This document shows, piece after piece, positions 3,712-41,648 of a stretch of DNA of 41,648 nucleotides. The notes beneath the pieces were generated by a model. It was given only the letters and a program-made list of their open reading frames with translations. It was not told the DNA's origin and did not search any database. The position numbers were made by a program, and so were the translations under genes. The DNA is from Octopus bimaculoides. Lineage: Eukaryota. Each line of letters opens with the position of its first letter. The first letter of the stretch is position 1. Location: positions 47,465,422-47,507,069 of the forward strand of contig NC_068989.1 of the NCBI RefSeq assembly GCF_001194135.2, given 5' to 3'.

Positions 3712-3892
3712 GTGAGCCAGCAGAATCGTTAACACGCTGGGCAAAGTTCTTAGCGGCATTTCGTCCGTCTGCGAGTTCTGAGATCTCGCCGAGATCGACT
3801 TTGTATTCCATCCTTTCGGATAACCACTGGGGCCGATATAATCGACTTACACCTTCCCCAAAATTGCTGAACTCGTTCCAAAATTTGAAACC
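3712..3892 (+). mobile_element. tRNA-derived SINE with a Meta-like core, internally deleted
   Basis: GAGCCAGCAGAATCGTTAACACGCTGGGC...GCCGAGATCGACTTTGTATTCCATCCTTTCG; same family as 33434-33648. An older fragment probably lies at about 3570-3680. Confidence 0.8.
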
Positions 3893-4124: not shown

Positions 4125-4302
4125 TAGAGTTCTATATTTGAGATGTGAAGAATTATGTACATTATTTATATTATTTACATTTGACAGATATTTGTCCTCA
4201 TCTTGTTTCTTATTAACACAACGTTTCGGCTGATGTATTCTCCAGCCTTCATCANNNNNNNNNNGTTCGAACATGGGTTCTCATTCCTAAGGCATTTTCC
4301 GA
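4125..4302 (-). mobile_element. Penelope-like element terminal remnant carrying a hammerhead motif
   Basis: Minus strand reads [N]TGATGA-A-GGCTGG...TCAGCC-GAAAC-GTTGTG, next to (AAT)n. Hammerhead motifs are characteristic of Penelope-like pseudo-LTRs. No RT or GIY-YIG sequence is visible. Confidence 0.55.
4215..4255 (-). ncRNA. Hammerhead ribozyme-like core
   Basis: UGAUGA box, 6-bp stem II (GGCUGG/UCAGCC) and GAAAC box. The first C of CUGAUGA falls in the 10-N gap; stems I and III are unresolved. Confidence 0.5.

Positions 4303-4364
<62 letters not shown>
4303..4364. repeat. (TTA)n microsatellite
   Basis: Direct reading. Confidence 0.97.
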
Positions 4365-4365
<1 letters not shown>

Positions 4366-4381
4366 GTTCCAGTTCAGACAA

Positions 4382-5520
4382 ACAACTAAATCATGTCGAG
4401 CAGAAGGAGGGATTCTTTACCGTGGAGCAAATGGGTTTCTCACTAAAAGCTCATTACCATATATCCTGAAGGCCTGCCATGACAAGTCAATTACTGGTGG
4501 CCATTTTGGCAGAGATAAAACGTTAGCCAAAATCTCTGACCGTTATTACTGGAAGGAAATGAAGAGTGATGTTCACCAACATATCAAAGCCTGCTCAAAA
4601 TGTTTTGTGATAAATCCCCAAATTAGCAAGGAGGCTCCACCACTTAACAGTATACCAGCACCTAGAAGAGTATGGAACATATTCGGGATTGATATGATTG
4701 GTCCCCTTAAGGAAACATCAAACGACAACAAATATATAGTTGCTGCCACTGATCATTTCTCCAAATAGACTGAAGCAACAGCTGTTTCAGAGAAGGGTGT
4801 CAAGTCAATAGCAAATTTTTTGTACTCCGTTATTTGCCGCCTTGACTGTATGAACACTCTGAATAGCTACCAGGGACGAGAGTTTGTGAACTCGATCATC
4901 GACAACTTGATGGCGCATTTCCAAAAAGGTCGCCGCGTTTCATCTGCCTACCACCCGCAAACAAAGGGCCAGCGGGAAAGTGACAATCGAACACTCTAAG
5001 AATCTCTTAGTAAGCTTGCCAATGTTCAAGGAAACAACTGGGACCAGTTCATCCCTGGTGTTCTGTTCGTTTATCACACAACAGAGTATGCCTCAACCAA
5101 GTGCATTCCATTTGAAGTCATGTGCGAACGGAAGGCCAAGCTTCCTATGGACCCCAAACATTCAGAAGATGACACTGCGGTCCCCACGATGATGCTAATG
5201 CTGATGTTTTGGATACACTGACAACCATTCATAAAATATTCCGTTTAACCGTTGGTACCAACAACCACTCTGCTGAGGAACACTAGAAGCGAGTCTTTGA
5301 TTGAAAACAGAACAGCAGCAAAGAAATCACTCTTGGCTCCATCGTTTACATCAAGAATCAGCGCCGTATTCATCGAATGGGTTCAAAGATGGACCGACGC
5401 TGAATCGGACCCGACTTAATTGTGGAATCTTTGACCGAAGGACGAGTAAGACTTTAGAACAATAAAACTGACGAGATACTGAGCAACACCTACCACGCCA
5501 GCAACCTTAAGATTTACCAA
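4382..5520 (+). pseudogene. Disrupted DDE integrase/transposase (HHCC zinc finger, rve core, GPY/F-like motif)
   Basis: Hand translation: LKACHDKSITGGHFGRDKTLAKISDRYYWKEM...CSKC (HHCC); VWNIFGIDMIGP (D1, 4691); S[Y]QGREF (D2 mutated to TAC, 4868); AYHPQTKGQRE (E, 4976; D35E spacing). After a frameshift, KMDRR*IGPDLIVE (GPY/F-like). Several in-frame stops (e.g. 4766-4768). Confidence 0.93.
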
Positions 5521-5769
5521 GATGAAGAGGTTTCTCTATCACTCTAGTCCCCTGATGTTTGTCCCAGTGTCTCTACTGATGACAACCCAAAGTAAAAGAC
5601 ACTCAAAAGACCACGTGAAGAACCGGACAATGATGACATCTACATCTCACAGAAAGACGAGCAGACCAAGACTTTCAACCCACTACCAAGTTCAGGAGAT
5701 AAGTATCTTAGCACTGCTCTCGGTTTTACGTTTGGTGAGGTTGTGTACTATGGACGTACAAGGGGCCTT

Positions 5770-6169
5770 GGACAAACACGGCGTACATATAAAACCAAAG
5801 GTGAAGGGAACTACAAATCTTGGGCCATCAGCTACATCCTGACAGGATCAGAGGACAACCACTCTCTTCTCAGAATTAAATTCACCCATAAGAACACTGA
5901 CTTGACAAAAAACTACAGGACTACTTGAACCAAAATGTGAATGAATATGTAAACTAGTCTGGCATTTCTCATGATGGAGTCTGGGCAACTGATGCAGAGA
6001 TCATTGCCATAGCGAATCTGTTGAGTTGCAGCATCGTCATCCACATAGAATCAGTGATTCAATGGATTGGTTGACCTATCCTGCAAGTTTGAAGCTTCAG
6101 TCAACAACAGAACATGCAGTTTGTCTTGAAAACAAGCACGATCATTTTGATGTTGTTATCAGTTTCTAA
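5770..6169 (+). pseudogene. Disrupted OTU-family cysteine protease (deubiquitinase-like) domain at the transposase C-terminus
   Basis: TKGEGN[Y]KSWAISYILTGSEDNHSLLR (Cys box, with TAC at 5812 where Cys is expected); GVWATDAEIIAIANLLSCSIVIH; CLENKHDHFDVVISF* (His box, stop 6167-6169). Starts in the same frame as the integrase C-terminus; two internal frameshifts. Confidence 0.8.
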
Positions 6170-8635
6170 CTTTCAACTTTTATATTGTAGCTAGGACTTG
6201 CTAGTCTTAGAAGTTGAAGTTCCAGGACATTATAACTGTTAATATAATATGAACAGTAGAATTAATTATATTACAATTGCATTATACTGTTTTGGGCAGG
6301 GAATTTTATATTAATGTGTAACCACTACTGAGAAGTGTGGTAGTAATCTTTGATCGTTGTGGAAGTATAATATTTTCAAAGATTGAAATTTTTCTGGTTG
6401 AAGTAATTATAGTCTATGCGTTTAGGGTTTTAAGATTTAAGTCAGTTAGCTTTTTCAATTAACTGACCTGACAAAGGTAAATCCTCATAAAATGTTGAAA
6501 AATTAAGTAAATGTTGTGTATATCACTCAACATTACTCATATCATGGAGGCATAAACTGGCCCGAGGGGAATATATACTGGCCTTGGCCATAATGTACTC
6601 GAAGTATAATCTAGCCTCGGCCCCTTTAAACCCAGGTATAGTCCGGACTGGGGGTATACTCTGGTCTGTTGCACCGGAACTAACTTAATATCAAACAACA
6701 TTTGAGAACCTTAATTCAACTGTGTGATACAAGAAAATGTTACAGATTAACAATAATCCTTTCAGTGAAGAGATTGTTATTTATCTGGACACGAAAATTA
6801 AATGTAATCCACTTTCATGCACTTTCAAATTGCTTTAAGAGTCAATTAGTTGTATCCAAATTTCTGGCACATCAAAATTTTGCCGTCCTAAATTTACACT
6901 ACATAAATATGTAGTGGCTTTTATAAATATCTATACAGTTTTAGAATATTAACGGAATTATTACAAAGGCAATTCTTGTAAGTTGTATGAAAATAAATTA
7001 TTTATTTGATTTATTACAAAGCTGGCCAGACTTGCTAAGTGTAAGAGACATATTACAATAAACAGCAGGAGTTTTAGCCGAAATGTCACGTTAATAGTTA
7101 AATTAACAATTGTTAAAATAACAATTTGTTATTTACATATTAATGCTGCCGATGCACAGACTGTGTCTATAAATTAATAGAAGGCTTCAAATTATTCTTT
7201 ACTCTTTAACTGTCCTCTGCCACTGGACTGCAGCTGTGTTGGAGCACAATCTTCAAGGGATTTACGTAAATCTCATCGATTCTTGCTGATATTTCAGCCC
7301 GTTATTTATAACATTTTAGATATCTCTGTTTATCATCGGAAGACTAAATTATCGTTTTAGATAGATATTGTATTTTTTTTACCGAAATGCATGAAGTCAG
7401 CTTCAACGGTTTACAACGATAAACATGCACACGTACATACACATATAACACATAATCAGACATGCCCGCGTACATACACTCACACACACACAAACACACA
7501 CAAACACACACACACACACACACTTTCACGCAAACTCAGGCTGCATGTGTCTCTTGGGGTTGATCAAGTGACGCAGACACCTATGATAGACCCCGATAAG
7601 TGTTGAACATCGATTAAAACAGTTCATCGTTTTTCAATCAGTAGAGAAATAGATAAATTGGACTTGTTTGTATGTTTAATCCGTACGTTTATTTACATAC
7701 ACACACNNNNNNNNNNNNNNNNNNNNNNNNNNNNNNNNNNNNNNNNNNNNNNNNNNNNNNNNNNNNNNNNNNNNNNNNNNNNNNNNNNNNNNNNNNNNNN
7801 NNNNNNNNNNNNNNNNNNNNNNNNNNNNNNNNNNNNNNNNNNNNNNNNNNNNNNNNNNNNNNNNNNNNNNNNNNNNNNNNNNNNNNNNNNNNNNNNNNNN
7901 NNNNNNNNNNNNNNNNNNNNNNNNNNNNNNNNNNNNNNNNNNNNNNNNNNNNNNNNNNNNNNNNNNNNNNNNNNNNNNNNNNNNNNNNNNNNNNNNNNNN
8001 NNNNNNNNNNNNNNNNNNNNNNNNNNNNNNNNNNNNNNNNNNNNNNNNNNNNNNNNNNNNNNNNNNNNNNNNNNNNNNNNNNNNNNNNNNNNNNNNNNNN
8101 NNNNNNNNNNNNNNNNNNNNNNNNNNNNNNNNNNNNNNNNNNNNNNNNNNNNNNNNNNNNNNNNNNNNNNNNNNNNNNNNNNNNNNNNNNNNNNNNNNNN
8201 NNNNNNNNNNNNNNNNNNNNNNNNNNNNNNNNNNNNNNNNNNNNNNNNNNNNNNNNNNNNNNNNNNNNNNGTTTCTGCATTAAATAGAAACTAGATATAC
8301 CCGGATCGAGATCCATTACTTGGCTACGCTACTTCAATTACATAATGTCTTACAGATAATCTTTCAGTGATTTCAAATTGCCAATCCTACATTTGATTCT
8401 CAATAATACAATCATTTTTTCATATTTTCAAATCGATACAAACGCAGTATATATTTAAGAGACTAGAAAATGTGTAATTCTGACTATATTTTATATAGCA
8501 AAAGGCGAACTACAACGCCATATTTAGATCTTCCCACTAAGCTAATCAACTACTTCACTGCATGTATTATGGTGATAATGTTGAATAAACATCGTAAAAC
8601 TCTTCTATTTCCTTGGTGATGTATAACGGTGGAGA

Positions 8636-8637
<2 letters not shown>

Positions 8638-8668
<31 letters not shown>

Positions 8669-8780
8669 TGTATGTATGTGTGTATGTGTGTGTATGTATG
8701 TGTGTTTGTCCGTCCGTCGTCTTTTTGTCTGTCTGTCAGTATGTGTGCATGTATGTATGTTTGTTTGTTTGTATGTATGA
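8638..8780. repeat. (TATG)n and degenerate TG/TTTG tract
   Basis: Direct reading. Confidence 0.9.
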
Positions 8781-8781
8781 T

Positions 8782-9455
8782 TCTTTTGTATTTAATCATT
8801 TAGATTATTCCTCTTAAGCAGGAGCTAATTTCTAATAGATACAAATATTCATCTTTGGAATGTAGATAACGAAAACAATGTCACATTTTAAACCTGAGAA
8901 AACTCTTGCATAGTTTTACTATTCCCTTACAGATCATATTTGTAATGTGCCAAACAGTTGGTTGATTTCTTTTTCTGAAAACCTGTCTTATTCAAACTTA
9001 TAGAACCAAGTGCTCCAGTTATTACTGGTATAAATGCAAATTTGTGATCCGGATATTGAAGCTGGAGGTTTCGAAGCAGTTGTCCATAGTTATCTTTTTT
9101 CTCTTTGATTTTCGAAGAGATATTTATATCAGCAGGATAGCTGACCTCTATGACGGTACATACTTTTTCTTGTCTGTCACAAATCACTATATCTGACCTG
9201 TTATGTTTACACGTAACAGATGGGAATGTTCCACCAGTATCCCTTATGCTGATATCTGTGTACGTATTCAATAACAGGGGGATTCTCTGCATTTATTCCA
9301 GGACTGTCTTTCTTTCGAATGACTTTGTATATTGTTTTTTTTTACGGCAGCGTCTTGTTGCACAGGGCAGTCATACTTTGATGACATTTTTAGGTAGCTG
9401 CTAATCACATGCAGAAATATGACAATATATATTCATGGTTGCATCTTGGAAATCC
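8782..9455 (-). mobile_element. R4/Dong-clade non-LTR retrotransposon 3' fragment (restriction-like endonuclease)
   Basis: ORF 8927-9292: KHNRSDIVICDRQEKVCTVIEVSYPADINISSKIKEKKDNY...FIPVITGALG matches the PD..D/E..K RLE. Upstream is a degenerate zinc-knuckle tail (HVISSYLKMSSKY). The 3' end abuts a CATA/CAAA microsatellite. Confidence 0.88.
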
Positions 9456-9584
9456 AAGGACTTCCCTGTCTCTATTATTGATTAGTTATTTAGTAGCTAT
9501 CTCTTGTTCTTAGATTGCAAATGCATAGCCTTCGAAGTGTGATGGGATGGAGCGGTCACAAATATAAATCCCTCACAAACACGC

Positions 9585-14067: not shown

Positions 14068-14448
14068 GTGGAGGCACAATGGCCCAGTGGTTAGGGCAGC
14101 GGACTCGCGGTCATAGGATCACGGTTTCAATTCCCAGACCGGGTGTTGTGGGTGTTTAATGAGCGAAAACACCTAAAGCTCCACGAGGCTCCGGCAGGAG
14201 ATGGTGGTGAACCCTGCAGTAGTATTTCACCACAACTTTCTCTCACTCTTACTTCCTGTTTCTGCTGTGCCTGTAATTCAAAGGGTCAGCCTTGTCACAC
14301 TGTGCCACGCTGAATATCCCCGAGAACTACGTTAAGGGTACACGTGTCTGTGGAGTGCTCAGCCACTTTCACGTTAATTTCACGAGCAGGCTGTTCCGTT
14401 GATCGGATCAACTGGAACCCACGACGTCGTAAGCGACGGAGTGCCAAC
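14068..14448 (+). mobile_element. tRNA-derived SINE with an RTE-like tail (Ceph-SINE-like), full length with TSD
   Basis: A box TGGCCCAGTGG, B-box-like GGTTTCAATTCCC, tail GATCAACTGGAACCC...GACGGAGTGCCAAC. Flanked by GGAATGTGTTA(C/T)TG at 14054-14067 and 14449-14462. Confidence 0.9.

Positions 14449-18289: not shown

Positions 18290-18340
<51 letters not shown>
18030..18340. repeat. (TG)n-(AG)n tract spanning an N gap
   Basis: Direct reading. Confidence 0.93.
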
Positions 18341-18344
<4 letters not shown>

Positions 18345-18689
18345 ATCCTTATATGCCATGTTTGCAATTCTCCATATTCTCTTTTCTAATTAAATAGTAA
18401 AAACGAGAGAAAATATCACCCCCTCTTTTGCAAGAGAAATTAATTTTGGCTGTAAGGTCTAAACCCCTTGTTTCACTATCACAATTAAAAAGCGTTTCTC
18501 TTTACTTTACAAAAAAGGATGTGGGGTCGTAGACGTATGACGGAGAATTATTCAATATCGTGTTTGTTTCTATGAGAATCGTTTACCTGTTCATTCGCTT
18601 AAGATTCAGAAATTGTTGCGTGCGCGCACACCAACACAGAAAATTTCCAGACATTTAGCTGTTAATTTTTGCAGTTCATTTTCAATTTT

Positions 18690-19525
18690 TATCTCACCGG
18701 TAGATGATACTGTGACGACATTTTCGGACAACTCCTTATCATGTGGGTGATATATTATGTGCTAGCTCCACAAAGTCTGCATCAATTGTCTTATTTTCCT
18801 GCTTCTTTCACTTTTATTCATCAGGTATTTGGTTGGTATTTCCTGTTCCTGGATTGCAAAAGCATACCTTTCAAAGTGGGAGGAAGTAATTCGGTTACTG
18901 GTCCATGATAAACTGCTTTGACAGTTTTCCCCTTTCATAACTATATAACAACATTTGTCCTGACTAAACTCCAACCCTACATCTTTTGAGAATGTAACAA
19001 GGACAAGTCTCTTTTTCATCACGTGTATATTCTTTGCATAGAGTTTCAAGTCATCCACAAAAAAAGTTTTGTGTAGTTTTGGTATTTCTGTTTCCTTGAG
19101 AACCAGTGAGATATCCTTCACACTTCCTTAACATGAATTACAAGGGGTTCACAGAAAGTATAAACACCAACACAGAGAGGTTGTCCCCTTGAAATATTCT
19201 TTTGCGATACTGCATTGGTTCAGTGAAAATACAATTTTGACATGGTCACTCACGATGAAGTCACGCCAGCTATGTCTTTGACTATGCTCACTGGAACTTT
19301 AACAAGTTGAAGAGCTTCTAGCATCCATGAGTGTAGAACAGAGTCAACGGGTTCCTTGTACTCAAGCCACATTGACACTAGATTCCTCCCATGCGCCTGC
19401 ACCCCTGACATCACAGTTTTATTGATTAACAGTTGCTCGGTATAACTCCAGACTCCCTTCTTCCCAGTTGGTTGTTCTTCTGTGATGATTTTATTAGTCT
19501 CACAACGGTCTTGGAGAAAGAGGTT
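18690..19525 (-). mobile_element. R4/Dong-clade LINE fragment (RT + CCHC), internally deleted
   Basis: Hand translation across frameshifts: IITEEQPTGKKGVWSYTEQLLINK; WLEYKEPVDSVLHSWMLEAL; IFQGDNLSVLVFILSVNPL; FFVDDLKLYAKN; WTSNRITSSHFERYAFAIQEQEIPTKYL; CRLCGAST*YITHMIRSCPKMS. Confidence 0.9.
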
Positions 19526-19543
19526 TAAGCTTATGTATGTATG

Positions 19544-19608
<65 letters not shown>

Positions 19609-30452: not shown

Positions 30453-30975
30453 CAAAAAAAAAAGAAAATGGAAATTTTACCGGTGTGTTAAACTATAAGG
30501 CACCAAAAGAGAATGACTCTCTCCANNNNNNNNNNNNNNNNNNNNNNNNNNNNNNNNNNNNNNNNNNNNNNNNNNNNNNNNNNNNNNNNNNNNNNNNNNN
30601 NNNNNNNNNNNNNNNNNNNNNNNNNNNNNNNNNNNNNNNNNNNNNNNNNNNNNNNNNNNNNNNNNNNNNNNNNNNNNNNNNNNNNNNNNNNNNNNNNNNN
30701 NNNNNNNNNNNNNNNNNNNNNNNNNNNNNNNNNNNNNNNNNNNNNNNNNNNNNNNNNNNNNNNNNNNNNNNNNNNNNNNNNNNNNNNNNNNNNNNNNNNN
30801 NNNNNNNNNNNNNNNNNNNNNNNNNNNNNNNNNNNNNNNNNNNNNNNNNNNNNNNNNNNNNNNNNNNNNNNNNNNNNNNNNNNNNNNNNNNNNNNNNNNN
30901 NNATATATATATTATACATAAACATACACAAGTCCGTGTCTGTGTCTGTGTATGTGTGTGTGAAAGTCATTAAGA

Positions 30976-32406
30976 TAGTGTTTCCCTGGGTATTGAATTG
31001 TTTTGAAGATGCCTACATCCACACAGTGCCGGTCTCCCAGAGATTTTTGAAGGATGTTGAGGAGCTTCGGGTCCTTGAAACCCAAACTGTTGCAGTATCT
31101 CGTCTTTTGATGGAGATGCTGGGATCTTTGGCACTATGCAATCGCGGCACGTTCTGCTGTTTGTGTAAATTTCAATAGTAGAATTTGTTACGAAACTTTC
31201 AAGGATTTTCCAGATGCATATCACTGCATATCTTTCCCGCCTTCAGTCTAGAGGGATGTGTTTTAATTCTTTCAGACTTTCCGAGTAGCTGATACGCTGC
31301 ATTCAGACGATTTTTTTTTGTGTAACTTCGTTGGATTGCTGCGAGTTCTGCTGTTAACTTTATATTGTGTGGTGACCTCAGTTGTGAGCAGTAGTCCAAG
31401 CAGCTGGGGATGTATTCCCTCCAATGGACCATTATTGTCTCTTTTTTTCTCGTTTTGAAAGTTCGGAGTATCCAGCCAGCCAGCCAGCCCCAAACCATTA
31501 CCAAACTGGCAATATGCACCTGCAAAGACGCATCACTACCCATGCAAATGCCCGGGTCACGCAACGATTTCAACTCAGGGACTGTAATCCTTCCCTCGGT
31601 AGTGCATCCCTTCCGTATGACGTTCACCCTCTGCGCCGGTAGCGCTGGGCCCTGAATTTTCCTGCATCAAACTGCATGCCATCGTCCTCAGTCCATCCGC
31701 ACATCGCATAAGACTCCCGCTGCAAATGCGCAATACCTACAGGATCCTGCATTGACCCAGAGACCCCTGTGCCATTTGCACATCTGACAAACGTGACCAT
31801 CCGAGCAGCCGAGGGCACGTCAGAGAGGGAACCCCATGAACATCAGTGACTCCAAGGCAGTGCTCCCTGGAACACCACACGCCACCCGTGTTTGCCCCGA
31901 GGTGGCTCCACATGCCAATAACCGCCTGTCGTCCGTCGCCCAGAAAGTCAGTCATGCAACCTCCCAACTATATCGAGATCATGTAGTTTGTGATATATCA
32001 TACCATGATCGACTTTATCAAAGGCTTTTGAAAAGACGAGATTTATCACATCCACATTTGAGTCATTTAGCAGCTGTGTTAACACTCAGTCGTTATGTTG
32101 CAAGAGCTGTGTTAGACAGCTTGTACCTGGTCAAAATGCATGCTGGGTATCAGTCAGCAAGTCCTTTTCTTCAAAGAATGCGATTTGTTTCTTGCAGACT
32201 ATCCGTTCCATGACTTTGCTGACGTGTGAGGTTAGAGAGATAGGCCTATAATTTTTAGCATATGCTCGGCTTCCTTCTTTATGGATAGGGCATATTATGT
32301 CTTCCTTCTGGGAAATTGCCTCTCTTAAGAAAGCTCTGAAAAAGAAGATGCAGTGATTTTGCAAGGGATTGCTTCCTTGATTTAAGAAGGATTGCTGGGA
32401 ATCCAT
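30976..32406 (-). mobile_element. CR1-like LINE, 5'-truncated, with a nearly complete but decayed RT domain
   Basis: ICPIHKEGSRAYAKNYRPISLTSHVSKVMERIV...LTDTQH; FSKAFDKVDHG; degenerate GVPQG-like region; DDGMQFDAGKF; CLDYCSQLRSP; MQRISYSESLKELK; RRERYAVICIWKILE. Confidence 0.93.
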
Positions 32407-32560
32407 TATGTATATATACTTTATCTATAAGGCTTAATTTAATATTAATTTTTTATAAATNNNNNNNNNNNNNNNNNNNNNNNNNNNNNNNNNNNNNNNN
32501 NNNNNNNNNNNNNNNNNNNNNNNNNNNNNNNNNNNNNNNNNNNNNNNNNNNNNNNNNNNN

Positions 32561-33433: not shown

Positions 33434-33795
33434 GGCGACGAGCTGGCAGAATCATTGGCAAGCCGGCCAAACTGCTTAGCGGTATTTCGTCTGTTGCTAC
33501 GTTCTGAGTTCAAGTTCCGCCGAGGTCGACATTGCCTTTCATTCTCACGGGGTCAATAAATTAAGTACCAGTGAAACACTGGGGGTCGATGTAATCGACT
33601 AGTCACCTCCCCACAAATTTGAGGCCTTGAGCTTTCAGTAGAAAGGGTTATTCATGTTACTGTTAAAGCTGGCAGAATTGTTAGCACTCTGGACAAAATG
33701 CTTAGTCGTATTTCGTCCGTCTTAACGTTCTGGGTTCAAATGTCACCGAGAACGACATTGCCTTTCGTTATTTCAGGGTCGATAAAATAAGGACA
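33434..33795 (+). mobile_element. Two tandem Meta-like SINE copies (33434-33648 and 33668-33795)
   Basis: GAGCTGGCAGAATC...GAGTTCAAGTTCCGCCGAGGTCGACATTGCCTTTCATTCTCACGGGGTCAATAAATTAAGTACCAG, resembling the MetaSINE core. Confidence 0.85.
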
Positions 33796-41319: not shown

Positions 41320-41648
41320 GGAGGCGCAATGGCCCAGTGGTTAGGGCAGCGGACTCGCGGTTTCTATTCCCAGACCGGGCGTTGTGAGTGTTTATTGAGC
41401 GAAAACACCTAAAGCTCCACGAGGCTCCGGCAGGGGTTGGTGGCGAACCCTGCTATACTCTTTCACCACAACTTTCTCTTACTTTATCTTCCTGTTTCTG
41501 TTGTGCCTGTAATTCAAAGGGTCAGCCTTGTCACATTGTGTCACGCTGAATATCCCCGAGAACTATGTTAAAGGTACACGTGTCTGTGGAGTGCTCAGCC
41601 ACTTGCACGTTAATTTCACGAGCAGGCTGTTCCGTTGATCGGATCAAC
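41320..41648 (+). mobile_element. Second copy of the Ceph-like SINE (runs off the window end)
   Basis: Highly similar to 14070-14412, with a 14-nt deletion between CGGT microhomologies in the tRNA region. Confidence 0.9.

What the first reader, a model, noticed from the sequence alone, without database searches (positions are those of the whole stretch)
4365..6677. Ginger1-type DNA transposon whose integrase is fused to an OTU deubiquitinase-like domain
Seen in sequence: HHCC finger, D,D35E core and GPY/F-like motif, continuing in frame into GEGN[C>Y], WATDAEI and NKHDHFDVV, the Cys, middle and His boxes of OTU proteases. The ORF track misses this domain because stops and frameshifts break it. 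Established knowledge: Ginger1 elements are TIR transposons with Gypsy-related integrases, some carry OTU, Ulp1 or PHD domains, and they prefer CCGG-like targets. Inference: this is a cephalopod Ginger-OTU family, and a transposase carrying its own deubiquitinase could resist proteasomal or chromatin ubiquitin defence. This copy is dead: catalytic D2 and the OTU Cys are each a single-base change to Tyr.
Basis: partly seen in the sequence, partly recalled or inferred. Interest (0 to 1): 0.72.

Follow-up and report, generated by a model that had tools for sequence, protein, structure and literature searches.

The report
Dead Ginger1 transposon copy with OTU domain
This stretch is a broken, front-truncated copy of a Ginger1 cut-and-paste DNA transposon whose integrase-like transposase carries an OTU deubiquitinase domain, an architecture described in 2010, so it is an ordinary genomic fossil.

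Summary
Window 4364-6169 (+) aligns colinearly, across three frameshifts and nine in-frame stops, to residues 36-639 of intact 611-668-aa proteins built as H2C2 zinc finger + DDE integrase core + GPY/F (SH3-like) + OTU protease. The nearest is 59% identical in protein and 72.6% in DNA.

The OTU domain is real: 33-45 bits in three intact relatives scanned, a confident model that matches OTUD3/OTUD1, and Cys and His invariant in 15 relatives. Complete relatives from three lineages are 2.9-4.1 kb and have one long ORF, no RT or gag, terminal inverted repeats, TGTAA/TGTAG termini and CCGG target duplications. These are the published Ginger1 definition.

The window keeps the homologous 3' inverted repeat, ending ...TCTGGTCTGTTGCA at 6673 and followed by CCGG (6674-6677). 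Its 5' end is missing at an (ATT)20 tract and a 10-N gap.

The copy is dead: D2 is Tyr, GPY is GPD, and GDGNC is GEGNY.

Ginger1-OTU fusions, including one in the mollusc Aplysia, were published by Bao et al. in 2010, so novelty is low. The cephalopod origin and the idea that the OTU counters ubiquitin-based defence remain untested.

The parts
4255..4363 (.). 5' break of the copy: a 10-N assembly gap (4255-4264), 39 bp of unrelated sequence, and an (ATT)20 microsatellite (4304-4363) that abuts the first homologous codon.
   Evidence: No N-terminal or 5' TIR homology was found upstream.
4364..6169 (+). Transposase pseudogene, equivalent to residues 36-640 of the intact family protein. It has nine in-frame stops, three frameshifts, and a native TAA stop at 6167.
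   Evidence: tblastn of P0001 gives four colinear HSPs. blastn to L001 gives 72.6% identity over 1827 columns.
4454..4618 (+). H2C2 (HHCC) zinc-binding domain of the integrase. All four ligands are retained.
   Evidence: Pfam PF17921, 66.5 bits, E 2e-18. Family alignment.
4670..5110 (+). DDE (D,D35E) catalytic core. D1 is at 4691-4693. D2 at 4868-4870 is mutated to Tyr (TAC). E is at 4976-4978.
   Evidence: Pfam rve 18.3 bits on this copy and 34-45 bits on the intact relatives P0001, P0005 and P0007. DQGrEF is invariant in 15 relatives.
5344..5517 (+). GPY/F-containing SH3-like C-terminal integrase domain. The motif reads GPD here (5407-5415).
   Evidence: Pfam SH3_Tf2-1 is weak on this copy (14.4 bits) and just below its 30-bit cut-off in P0001 (29.2 bits). 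'Gpy' is conserved in the family.
5518..5673 (+). Variable, low-conservation linker between the integrase and the OTU domain.
   Evidence: Length and sequence vary across the family alignment.
5674..6166 (+). OTU cysteine-protease domain, split over three frames. The Cys box GEGNY (5800-5814) has Cys changed to Tyr and Asp changed to Glu. WATDAEI and the His box (HDHFDVV, 6137-6157) are retained.
   Evidence: Pfam OTU 22.1 bits on this copy and 33-45 bits in relatives. PDB sequence match to OTUD1 at 1e-6. AF2 model with pLDDT 92, and Foldseek matches to OTUD3/OTUD1.
6170..6539 (+). Non-coding 3' internal region of the element.
   Evidence: There is no ORF and no significant match. It lies between the stop codon and the TIR.
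6540..6673 (+). 3' terminal inverted repeat, ending ...GGGGGTATACTCTGGTCTGTTGCA-3'. It contains the only three copies in the window of the reiterated terminal motif GGGTATATTCTGGCC (6569, 6586 on the minus strand, and 6652).
   Evidence: It aligns to both TIR arms of relatives from three lineages, with 42 invariant columns.
6674..6677 (.). CCGG target site, the 3' copy of the expected 4-bp target-site duplication.
   Evidence: It directly follows the terminal CA. Relatives are flanked by CCGG on both sides (L009, L012). The chance of this at a fixed site is about 0.001.

Best explanation
Window 4364-6677 is a 5'-truncated, mutationally dead copy of a Ginger1 cut-and-paste DNA transposon of the OTU-carrying subgroup.

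In intact relatives, a 2.9-4.1-kb element carries a single gene for a transposase of about 610-670 aa. The domains in order are a YPYY-like motif, an H2C2 zinc finger, a DDE (D,D35E) RNase-H-fold core, a GPY/F SH3-like domain, a variable linker and a C-terminal OTU cysteine protease.

What is shown:
- The element ends are 100-300-bp inverted repeats built from reiterated, partly palindromic copies of a motif of about 15-17 nt (GGGTATAnTCTGGSC).
- The termini are 5'-TGTAA/TGTAG ... TTACA-3'.
- Insertions sit in CCGG, which is duplicated.

What is inferred:
- The transposase binds the reiterated motifs, cuts at the TG...CA ends and integrates into CCGG with a 4-bp stagger, as retroviral-type integrases do.
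- The OTU domain is an active isopeptidase needed by the element. Its Cys, His and the Asp of DGNC are conserved in the sponge, gastropod and unidentified-eukaryote relatives aligned here. It most likely removes ubiquitin, or a ubiquitin-like modifier, from the transposase itself or from chromatin or repair factors at the excision and integration site.

The window copy can do none of this. It lacks the first ~35 codons, the 5' UTR and the 5' TIR. It has nine stops and three frameshifts. It has lost catalytic D2 (Tyr), the GPY Tyr, and the OTU Cys (Tyr).
For: - Colinear tblastn to P0001 residues 36-639.
- One search returned 49 homologues. About 30 carry rve plus OTU, often with Integrase_H2C2, and none of those has an RT domain. 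The only RT-bearing hits are far weaker (1e-44 and 1e-33, against 1e-213).
- Pfam on intact relatives: H2C2 71-72 bits, rve 34-45, OTU 33-45.
- Complete elements with TIRs, TGTAA/TGTAG termini and CCGG on both flanks in three lineages: L001-L004, the sponge L009 and L012.
- Each of those elements has only one long ORF.
- The window's 3' end aligns to these TIRs and is followed by CCGG. The terminal motif occurs in the window only at 6569-6666.
- OTU fold: AF2 pLDDT 92, top PDB matches OTUD3 (7.5e-8) and OTUD1, then nairovirus vOTUs, DUBA and yeast Otu1.
- Catalytic residues are invariant in 15 relatives and mutated in the window.
- The published Ginger1 definition matches point by point (PMC2836005).
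Against: - This copy has only one end, so a TIR pair and a true duplication cannot be shown for it. The classification is by homology to complete relatives.
- The 3' terminus reads TTGCA, not the canonical YNACA. It is one transition away from the TTACA of L001-L004 and L012.
- The truncation point coincides with a microsatellite and lies about 100 bp from an N gap. Part of the 'truncation' could therefore be an assembly artefact.
- Two other relatives' loci (L010, L011) showed no recognisable TIRs.
- No experiment or expression data bear on the role of the OTU.
- No named Repbase Ginger1 sequence was available for direct comparison.
Confidence: 0.92

Rival explanations
1. It is the 3' part of a Ty3/Gypsy LTR retrotransposon pol (integrase) that happens to carry an OTU domain. 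The upstream RT and gag would be lost in the truncation, and 6540-6673 would be part of a 3' LTR.
For: The integrase domains (Integrase_H2C2, rve, SH3_Tf2-1) are the Gypsy type. The copy is 5'-truncated exactly where RT and RNase H would lie, so the window alone cannot exclude it. One database name for a relative calls it 'Retrovirus-related Pol polyprotein' (P0010).
Against: All close relatives are stand-alone proteins of about 610-670 aa that start with Met roughly 60 residues before the zinc finger. They sit in 2.9-4.1-kb elements with no room for RT. Their ends are inverted, not direct, repeats and are flanked by CCGG. The window's 3' end is homologous to those TIRs. RT-containing hits are at least 170 orders of magnitude weaker.
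Confidence: 0.02
2. It is a pseudogene of a domesticated, Ginger1-derived host gene (like vertebrate GIN1 or crustacean Imagin), not a transposon copy.
For: Ginger1 transposases have been domesticated repeatedly (PMC2836005; PMC12863088). There is only one copy in the window.
Against: The fragment retains the element's own non-coding 3' region and TIR, with the terminal TG..CA-type end abutting CCGG. A domesticated gene would not be expected to keep these. It also keeps the OTU domain. The only integrase-only relative seen here (P0010) is an unverified candidate for such a domesticated gene.
Confidence: 0.03
3. On mechanism only: the OTU domain is not a deubiquitinase acting on host ubiquitin signalling. 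It would be a processing protease that cleaves the transposase at the variable linker, as OTU-like or papain-like proteases of some RNA viruses cleave their polyproteins. Alternatively it could be a catalytically irrelevant ubiquitin-binding module.
For: The linker between the integrase and the OTU is long, variable and poorly conserved. The structural neighbours include viral OTU proteases embedded in large polyproteins.
Against: The nearest sequence and fold matches are cellular deubiquitinases, OTUD1 and OTUD3. No conserved cleavage motif is visible in the linker. The same OTU clade sits in Helitron Rep/helicase proteins at different positions. Other Ginger1 elements carry Ulp1, and a USP domain is fused to a related integrase. 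Convergence on isopeptidases suggests the target is ubiquitin or a ubiquitin-like modifier. The invariant Cys and His argue against a purely binding role.
Confidence: 0.15

Closest known systems
Ginger1 DNA transposons with a C-terminal OTU domain (Ginger1-1/2/3/11_HM of Hydra, Ginger1-1_AC of Aplysia californica; Bao, Kapitonov & Jurka 2010, PMC2836005)
   Same: A single transposase with YPYY, H2C2, DDE and GPY/F followed by OTU. Element size 2.6-7 kb (relatives here 2.9-4.1 kb). TIRs 40-270 bp (about 100-300 bp here). TGTNR termini. A 4-bp CCGG target duplication. No RT.
   Different: No Repbase sequence was available, so identity to a named family is unknown. The nearest sequence held is 72.6% identical in DNA and comes from an unidentified freshwater-metagenome eukaryote. 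The window copy is truncated and dead.
Ty3/Gypsy (Metaviridae) integrases
   Same: The same H2C2 + DDE + GPY/F (SH3_Tf2-1) integrase module and TG...CA element termini.
   Different: No gag, protease, RT or RNase H. Inverted rather than long direct terminal repeats. A fixed CCGG target. An extra OTU domain.
Domesticated Ginger1 derivatives (vertebrate GIN1; malacostracan Imagin, PMC12863088)
   Same: Homologous integrase module. P0010 from Homarus (51% identity, integrase only) may be such a gene; this is unverified.
   Different: Those are single-copy host genes without TIRs. P0010, the possible example here, has no OTU hit. This locus keeps the TIR, the CCGG flank and the OTU, and it is a decayed pseudogene.
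Animal Helitrons whose Rep/helicase protein carries OTU
   Same: The same OTU clade. A profile built from the Ginger1 OTU hits Helitron_like_N + PIF1 proteins at 1e-57 to 1e-35.
   Different: A completely different transposition enzyme (rolling-circle Rep/helicase). The OTU is N-terminal or internal and is sometimes duplicated.
Cellular and viral OTU deubiquitinases (OTUD1, OTUD3, OTUD5/DUBA, yeast Otu1, nairovirus vOTU)
   Same: The fold and the Cys, His and DGNC catalytic signature.
   Different: Only 17-24% identity. Here the domain is fused to a transposase. The substrate is unknown.

Membership tests
Ginger1 DNA transposon | Transposase with a Gypsy-type integrase module: H2C2 zinc finger, DDE core and GPY/F motif | tested here: met
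   Window copy: H2C2 66.5 bits; rve and SH3_Tf2-1 sub-threshold but colinear. Three intact relatives scanned: H2C2 71-72 bits and rve 34-45 bits; SH3_Tf2-1 is sub-threshold (29.2 bits in P0001 against a cut-off of 30). D, D, E and GPY are conserved in the alignment.
Ginger1 DNA transposon | YPYY motif N-terminal to the zinc finger | tested here: inconclusive
   Relatives have a conserved 'KYPxxIY' at residues ~19-25. The window copy starts at residue 36, so the motif region is missing.
Ginger1 DNA transposon | Extra C-terminal OTU or Ulp1 protease domain in the same ORF | tested here: met
   OTU is in frame with the integrase in uninterrupted ORFs of 611-668 aa. The window has the homologous, decayed domain at 5674-6166.
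Ginger1 DNA transposon | Terminal inverted repeats of about 40-270 bp | tested here: met
   Relatives: L001 has arms of 102 nt at 96% plus 102 nt at 86%. L009 and L012 have inverted ends. The window has only the 3' arm (6540-6673), which aligns to both arms of the relatives. No 5' arm is present.
Ginger1 DNA transposon | Termini 5'-TGTNR ... YNACA-3' | tested here: met
   L001 and L003 TGTAA, L009 TGTAA, L012 TGTAG. The 3' ends are TTACA in L001, L002, L004 and L012 and CTACA in L009. The window's 3' end is TTGCA, one transition from the TTACA type.
Ginger1 DNA transposon | 4-bp target-site duplication, CCGG (or CCGT/ACGG) | tested here: met
   CCGG is on both flanks in L009 and L012. It is also at the L001 5' flank and at the L002 and L004 3' flanks. 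In the window, CCGG sits at the one flank that exists (6674-6677). A duplication cannot be shown for this copy.
Ginger1 DNA transposon | No reverse transcriptase, RNase H or gag in the element | tested here: met
   Complete relatives are 2.9-4.1 kb with one long ORF. No RVT domain appears in any close homologue. In the window, nothing upstream of 4364 resembles the family or an adjacent pol. The nearest RT fragments belong to unrelated LINE debris on the other strand.
OTU cysteine proteases (Pfam PF02338) | Profile match above the curated threshold | tested here: met
   Intact relatives score 45.0, 43.1 and 33.4 bits against a cut-off of 23.3. The window copy itself scores 22.1 bits (E 2e-4), just below the cut-off, because of decay.
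OTU cysteine proteases (Pfam PF02338) | Catalytic Cys (DGNC box) and His (C-terminal box) | tested here: met
   D44, N46, C47 and H159 are invariant in 15 relatives. In the window copy, Cys is Tyr and Asp is Glu, while His is retained. The family has the triad; this copy has lost it.
OTU cysteine proteases (Pfam PF02338) | OTU fold | tested here: met
   AF2 model of the P0001 C-terminal domain: pLDDT 92.1, pTM 0.89. All 50 listed Foldseek PDB matches are OTU domains; OTUD3 4bou gives E 7.5e-8 with target-normalised TM-score (TMt) 0.69.
OTU cysteine proteases (Pfam PF02338) | Deubiquitinase or ubiquitin-like isopeptidase activity | not testable with these tools
   This needs a biochemical assay.
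Ty3/Gypsy LTR retrotransposon | Long direct terminal repeats, and gag, PR, RT and RNase H upstream of the integrase | tested here: not met
   The ends of complete relatives are inverted repeats. There is a single ORF and no RT.

The most novel reading that the evidence does not exclude
The OTU isopeptidase may be an obligatory, catalytically active part of Ginger1 transposition that acts on host ubiquitin or ubiquitin-like marks. It might shield the transposase from ubiquitin-dependent degradation, or erase ubiquitin signals on chromatin or repair factors at the cut site. Ginger1 lineages would then have repeatedly captured different isopeptidase classes for that purpose: OTU, Ulp1, and apparently USP/UCH in a sea-urchin protein. 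The evidence here is compatible with this but does not demonstrate it. The catalytic residues are invariant in the sponge, gastropod and unidentified-eukaryote relatives aligned here, and the same OTU clade is shared with Helitrons.
Probability: 0.3. Interest if true: 0.45.

Novelty: new member of a known kind. Interest (0 to 1): 0.13.

Why it matters
The main value is for annotation. This is a Ginger1 DNA-transposon fossil and should not be labelled as Gypsy or retroviral pol, as at least one database name for a relative does.

The comparative by-products are modestly useful. First, the terminal motif (GGGTATAnTCTGGSC, reiterated in both orientations) and the ...CTGTTACA|CCGG junction are shared by elements from a sponge, two unidentified eukaryotes and this genome. 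That gives a ready candidate transposase-binding site. Second, the OTU catalytic residues are invariant across the family, so the long-standing but untested idea that Ginger1 needs a deubiquitinase can be tested with the intact relatives found here.

Nothing about this particular copy is functional or surprising.

Tried and rejected
- Whole-window repeat search. It was swamped by N runs and microsatellites and gave no information on the element.
- Search for a 5' TIR or N-terminal coding remnant upstream of the (ATT)n tract. Fuzzy matching of the reverse-complemented 3' end, blastn-short, and tblastn with the N-termini of eight relatives found nothing above noise. By eye, 'VRTWVLIP' upstream looked faintly like the YPxWIYDLP motif. 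I rejected it as unsupported.
- Testing the 'cephalopod' attribution. A search with a 142-aa neighbouring ORF found nothing. A search with a LINE RT fragment found 143 unnamed metagenome or assembly proteins at 76% identity or less. Rfam and tRNA scans found nothing. Pfam on neighbouring ORFs gave only a weak RVT_1 hit. The host taxon stays unverified. From memory, the SINE-like repeat at 3715-3785 resembles octopus repeats, but that is a lead, not a test.
- Literature search for Ginger in cephalopods. The hits were the 'GINGER' gene-prediction program or author names, not the transposon.
- TIR search in L010 and L011. No convincing inverted repeats flank the gene.
- Look-ups of the genomic loci of P0005 (Nucella) and P0041 (sea-urchin USP fusion). 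They are not on record.
- The Gypsy-retrotransposon and domesticated-gene readings were considered and rejected (see rival explanations).


Full report
**Observation**

The window is a gap-ridden, microsatellite-rich eukaryotic scaffold with 16 N runs and 37% GC.

Between 4364 and 6169 on the plus strand, three reading frames together spell an integrase-like protein followed by an OTU-like domain. tblastn with the closest intact relative, P0001 (640 aa), gives four colinear HSPs that cover its residues 36-639:
- 4364-5197, frame +2, 67% identity
- 5188-5910, frame +1, 53%
- 5907-6077, frame +3, 59%
- 6047-6163, frame +2, 69%

There is no second copy anywhere in the window.

The copy carries nine in-frame stops and three frameshifts. 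Its native stop is TAA at 6167. On the decayed copy itself, Pfam gives a solid Integrase_H2C2 hit (66.5 bits). rve (18.3), SH3_Tf2-1 (14.4) and OTU (22.1 against a cut-off of 23.3; E 2e-4) are sub-threshold. The only correction is that the GPY/F site reads GPD here.

**Relatives and domain architecture**

A search of 5.8 billion proteins returned 49 homologues. The best are 611-668-aa proteins with the architecture Integrase_H2C2 + rve (+ SH3_Tf2-1) + OTU. They come from a gastropod (Nucella lapillus), a glass sponge (Oopsacas minuta) and many unnamed assemblies. E-values go down to 7e-213, and the nearest is 59% identical over the full length.

None of the close hits has a reverse-transcriptase domain. 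The only RT-bearing hits are at 1e-44 and 1e-33.

Pfam re-scored on three intact members gives H2C2 71-72 bits, rve 34-45 bits and OTU 33-45 bits, all above their cut-offs.

In an alignment of 15 relatives, these positions are invariant: D1, D2 (DQGrEF), E, and the OTU Asp, Asn and Cys of the DGNC box, the Trp-Ala of WATD, and the catalytic His. The GPY motif is conserved in at least 80% of them.

The window copy differs as follows:
- D2 is Tyr (TAC at 4868; GAC in L001).
- GPY is GPD.
- GDGNC is GEGNY (Cys is TAC at 5812; TGT in L001).

**The OTU domain is real**

The C-terminal 166 residues of P0001 match the OTUD1 and OTUD3 catalytic domains by sequence (1e-6 and 2e-6).

An AlphaFold2 model built on the family alignment is confident (pLDDT 92.1, pTM 0.89). 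All of its listed PDB fold matches are OTU proteases: OTUD3, OTUD1, nairovirus vOTUs, DUBA, A20 and yeast Otu1.

A profile of this domain finds 259 cluster representatives at E<=1e-30 and 2,475 at E<=1e-10 among 1.84 billion. This is a large, common clade. Several of the long hits are Helitron Rep/helicase proteins carrying the same OTU, as Bao et al. already noted.

**Ginger versus Gypsy**

- *L001-L008.* Eight ~4-kb metagenome contigs encoding P0001 are essentially the element itself. L001 reads CCGG|TGTAAGGCCAG... at its 5' end. Its 3' end reads ...GGCCTGTTACA, flanked by CTGG in that contig. The 3' ends of L002 and L004 read ...GGCCTGTTACA|CCGG. The inverted arms are about 100-200 bp (102 nt at 96%, then 102 nt at 86%). 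The element is 4,100 bp.
- *L009.* The sponge locus gives a perfect case: CCGG|TGTAACAGCCTAGATTA ... TAATCTAGGCTGCTACA|CCGG, 2,905 bp.
- *L012.* A third lineage gives CCGG|TGTAGCAGCCCAGAATATACCCCC ... GGGGGTATAATCTGGGCTGTTACA|CCGG, 3,308 bp.

Each element has one long ORF and no room for gag or pol.

These are exactly the published defining features of Ginger1 (PMC2836005):
- TIRs of 40-270 bp
- TGTNR termini
- a 4-bp CCGG or CCGT duplication
- a Gypsy-like integrase with YPYY, H2C2, DDE and GPY/F
- a C-terminal OTU or Ulp1 domain

**The window's own end**

The window reads ...GGGGGTATACTCTGGTCTGTTGCA|CCGG at 6650-6677. The last ~134 bp (6540-6673) align to both TIR arms of all three lineages, with 42 invariant columns.

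The 15-mer GGGTATATTCTGGCC (three mismatches or fewer) occurs only three times in the 41.6-kb window, all at 6569-6666. In the complete relatives it occurs 11-21 times, exclusively within the two ends and in both orientations. CCGG at a fixed position has a chance of about 0.001.

On the left, homology stops abruptly at 4364, where an (ATT)20 tract begins. A 10-N gap lies 100 bp further upstream. Neither the first ~35 codons, nor a 5' UTR, nor a 5' TIR can be found upstream. As assembled, the copy is 5'-truncated. An assembly artefact at the gap cannot be excluded.

**Mechanism**

Shown:
- the anatomy described above
- the conservation of the catalytic residues of both enzymes across distant hosts
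- the loss of those residues in this copy

Inferred from the established chemistry of retroviral-type DDE integrases:
- The transposase recognises the reiterated terminal motifs.
- It cleaves at the TG...CA ends.
- It inserts with a 4-bp stagger into CCGG.

The role of the OTU is not known. Bao et al. suggested involvement in transposition or in ubiquitin- or SUMO-regulated DNA repair.

Four observations favour a catalytic isopeptidase function useful to the element:
- the invariant Cys and His
- the presence of alternative isopeptidases at the same position in other Ginger1 elements (Ulp1)
- a USP/UCH domain (86 bits) fused to a related integrase in a sea-urchin protein
- the sharing of this OTU clade with Helitrons

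None of this identifies the substrate. A polyprotein-processing role is a weaker alternative.

**Comparison with what is known, and novelty**

The architecture, the target site, the termini, and even a molluscan example with OTU (Ginger1-1_AC of Aplysia) were published in 2010. Ginger elements are routinely counted in mollusc TE surveys (PMC10294476). Domesticated Ginger1 derivatives are known, namely GIN1 and Imagin (PMC12863088).

This locus is therefore a new, dead member of a known kind.

The host taxon ('cephalopod') could not be verified. Searches with neighbouring sequences returned no named proteins, and the literature search turned up only a gene-prediction program called GINGER.

**Verdict**

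The functional speculation and the taxon are untested. Interest is low.

Noticed in passing
P0041 (Pfam), Strongylocentrotus purpuratus LOC100889000: An 808-aa protein has a Ginger1-type integrase (H2C2 66 bits, rve 43 bits; 38% identical to the window's conceptual protein). Its C-terminal domain is a USP/UCH deubiquitinase (PF00443, 86 bits) instead of OTU. The Ginger1 paper lists only OTU, Ulp1 and PHD. This may be a third isopeptidase class captured at the same position, or a host-gene fusion.
   Followed up: partly
P0177, P0191, P0307: The OTU clade of these Ginger1 transposases also sits in 1.4-2.8-kaa Helitron proteins (Helitron_like_N + PIF1). P0177 matches Pfam OTU in two stretches. 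P0307 additionally has a Herpes_teg_N domain (37 bits). From my own knowledge, that domain is another cysteine deubiquitinase fold.
   Followed up: partly
L001 15-230 and 3900-4114; L009 5606-5840 and 8280-8510; L012 4309-4480 and 7350-7616; window 6569-6666: The TIRs are built from many copies, in both orientations, of a motif of about 15-17 nt (GGGTATAnTCTGGSC, often forming the palindrome CTGGCCTAGGCCAG). The motif and the terminal ...CTGTTACA|CCGG junction are shared by elements from a sponge, two unidentified eukaryotes and this genome. It is a likely transposase-binding site.
   Followed up: partly
P0045, Anomaloglossus baeobatrachus 'CD226 antigen': A frog gene model combines this transposon-type OTU (60% identical to the window's over 27% of the query) with immunoglobulin domains. 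It is probably a chimeric annotation or an exonised transposon fragment.
   Followed up: no
P0010, Homarus americanus 'Retrovirus-related Pol polyprotein ... partial': A 473-aa integrase-only relative (51% identity, no OTU) is named as retroviral pol. It may be the Ginger1-derived Imagin gene recently described in malacostracans (PMC12863088). I did not verify this.
   Followed up: partly
window 8280-9560 (-), 18300-19600 (-), 30950-32450 (-): These are decayed non-LTR retrotransposon fragments. The first two share a stretch of their C-terminal region (…SHFERYAFAIQEQEIPTKYL…), which suggests copies of one LINE family. The third has a recognisable RT segment whose best database matches are 76% identical or less and unnamed.
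   Followed up: partly
window 14119-14412 and 41355-41648: A 294-nt direct repeat at 93% identity, 27 kb apart. The second copy runs into the end of the window. It is probably two copies of another interspersed repeat.
   Followed up: no
window 3715-3785, 33441-33511, 33667-33737: A SINE-like repeat family of about 71 nt (73-76% identity). One copy lies just upstream of the Ginger1 fragment. ARAGORN and Rfam find no tRNA or RNA family there.
   Followed up: partly
window 4255-4363: The 5' break of the element coincides with an (ATT)20 microsatellite and lies 100 bp from a 10-N gap. The apparent truncation might be partly an assembly artefact. The window has 16 N runs in all.
   Followed up: partly
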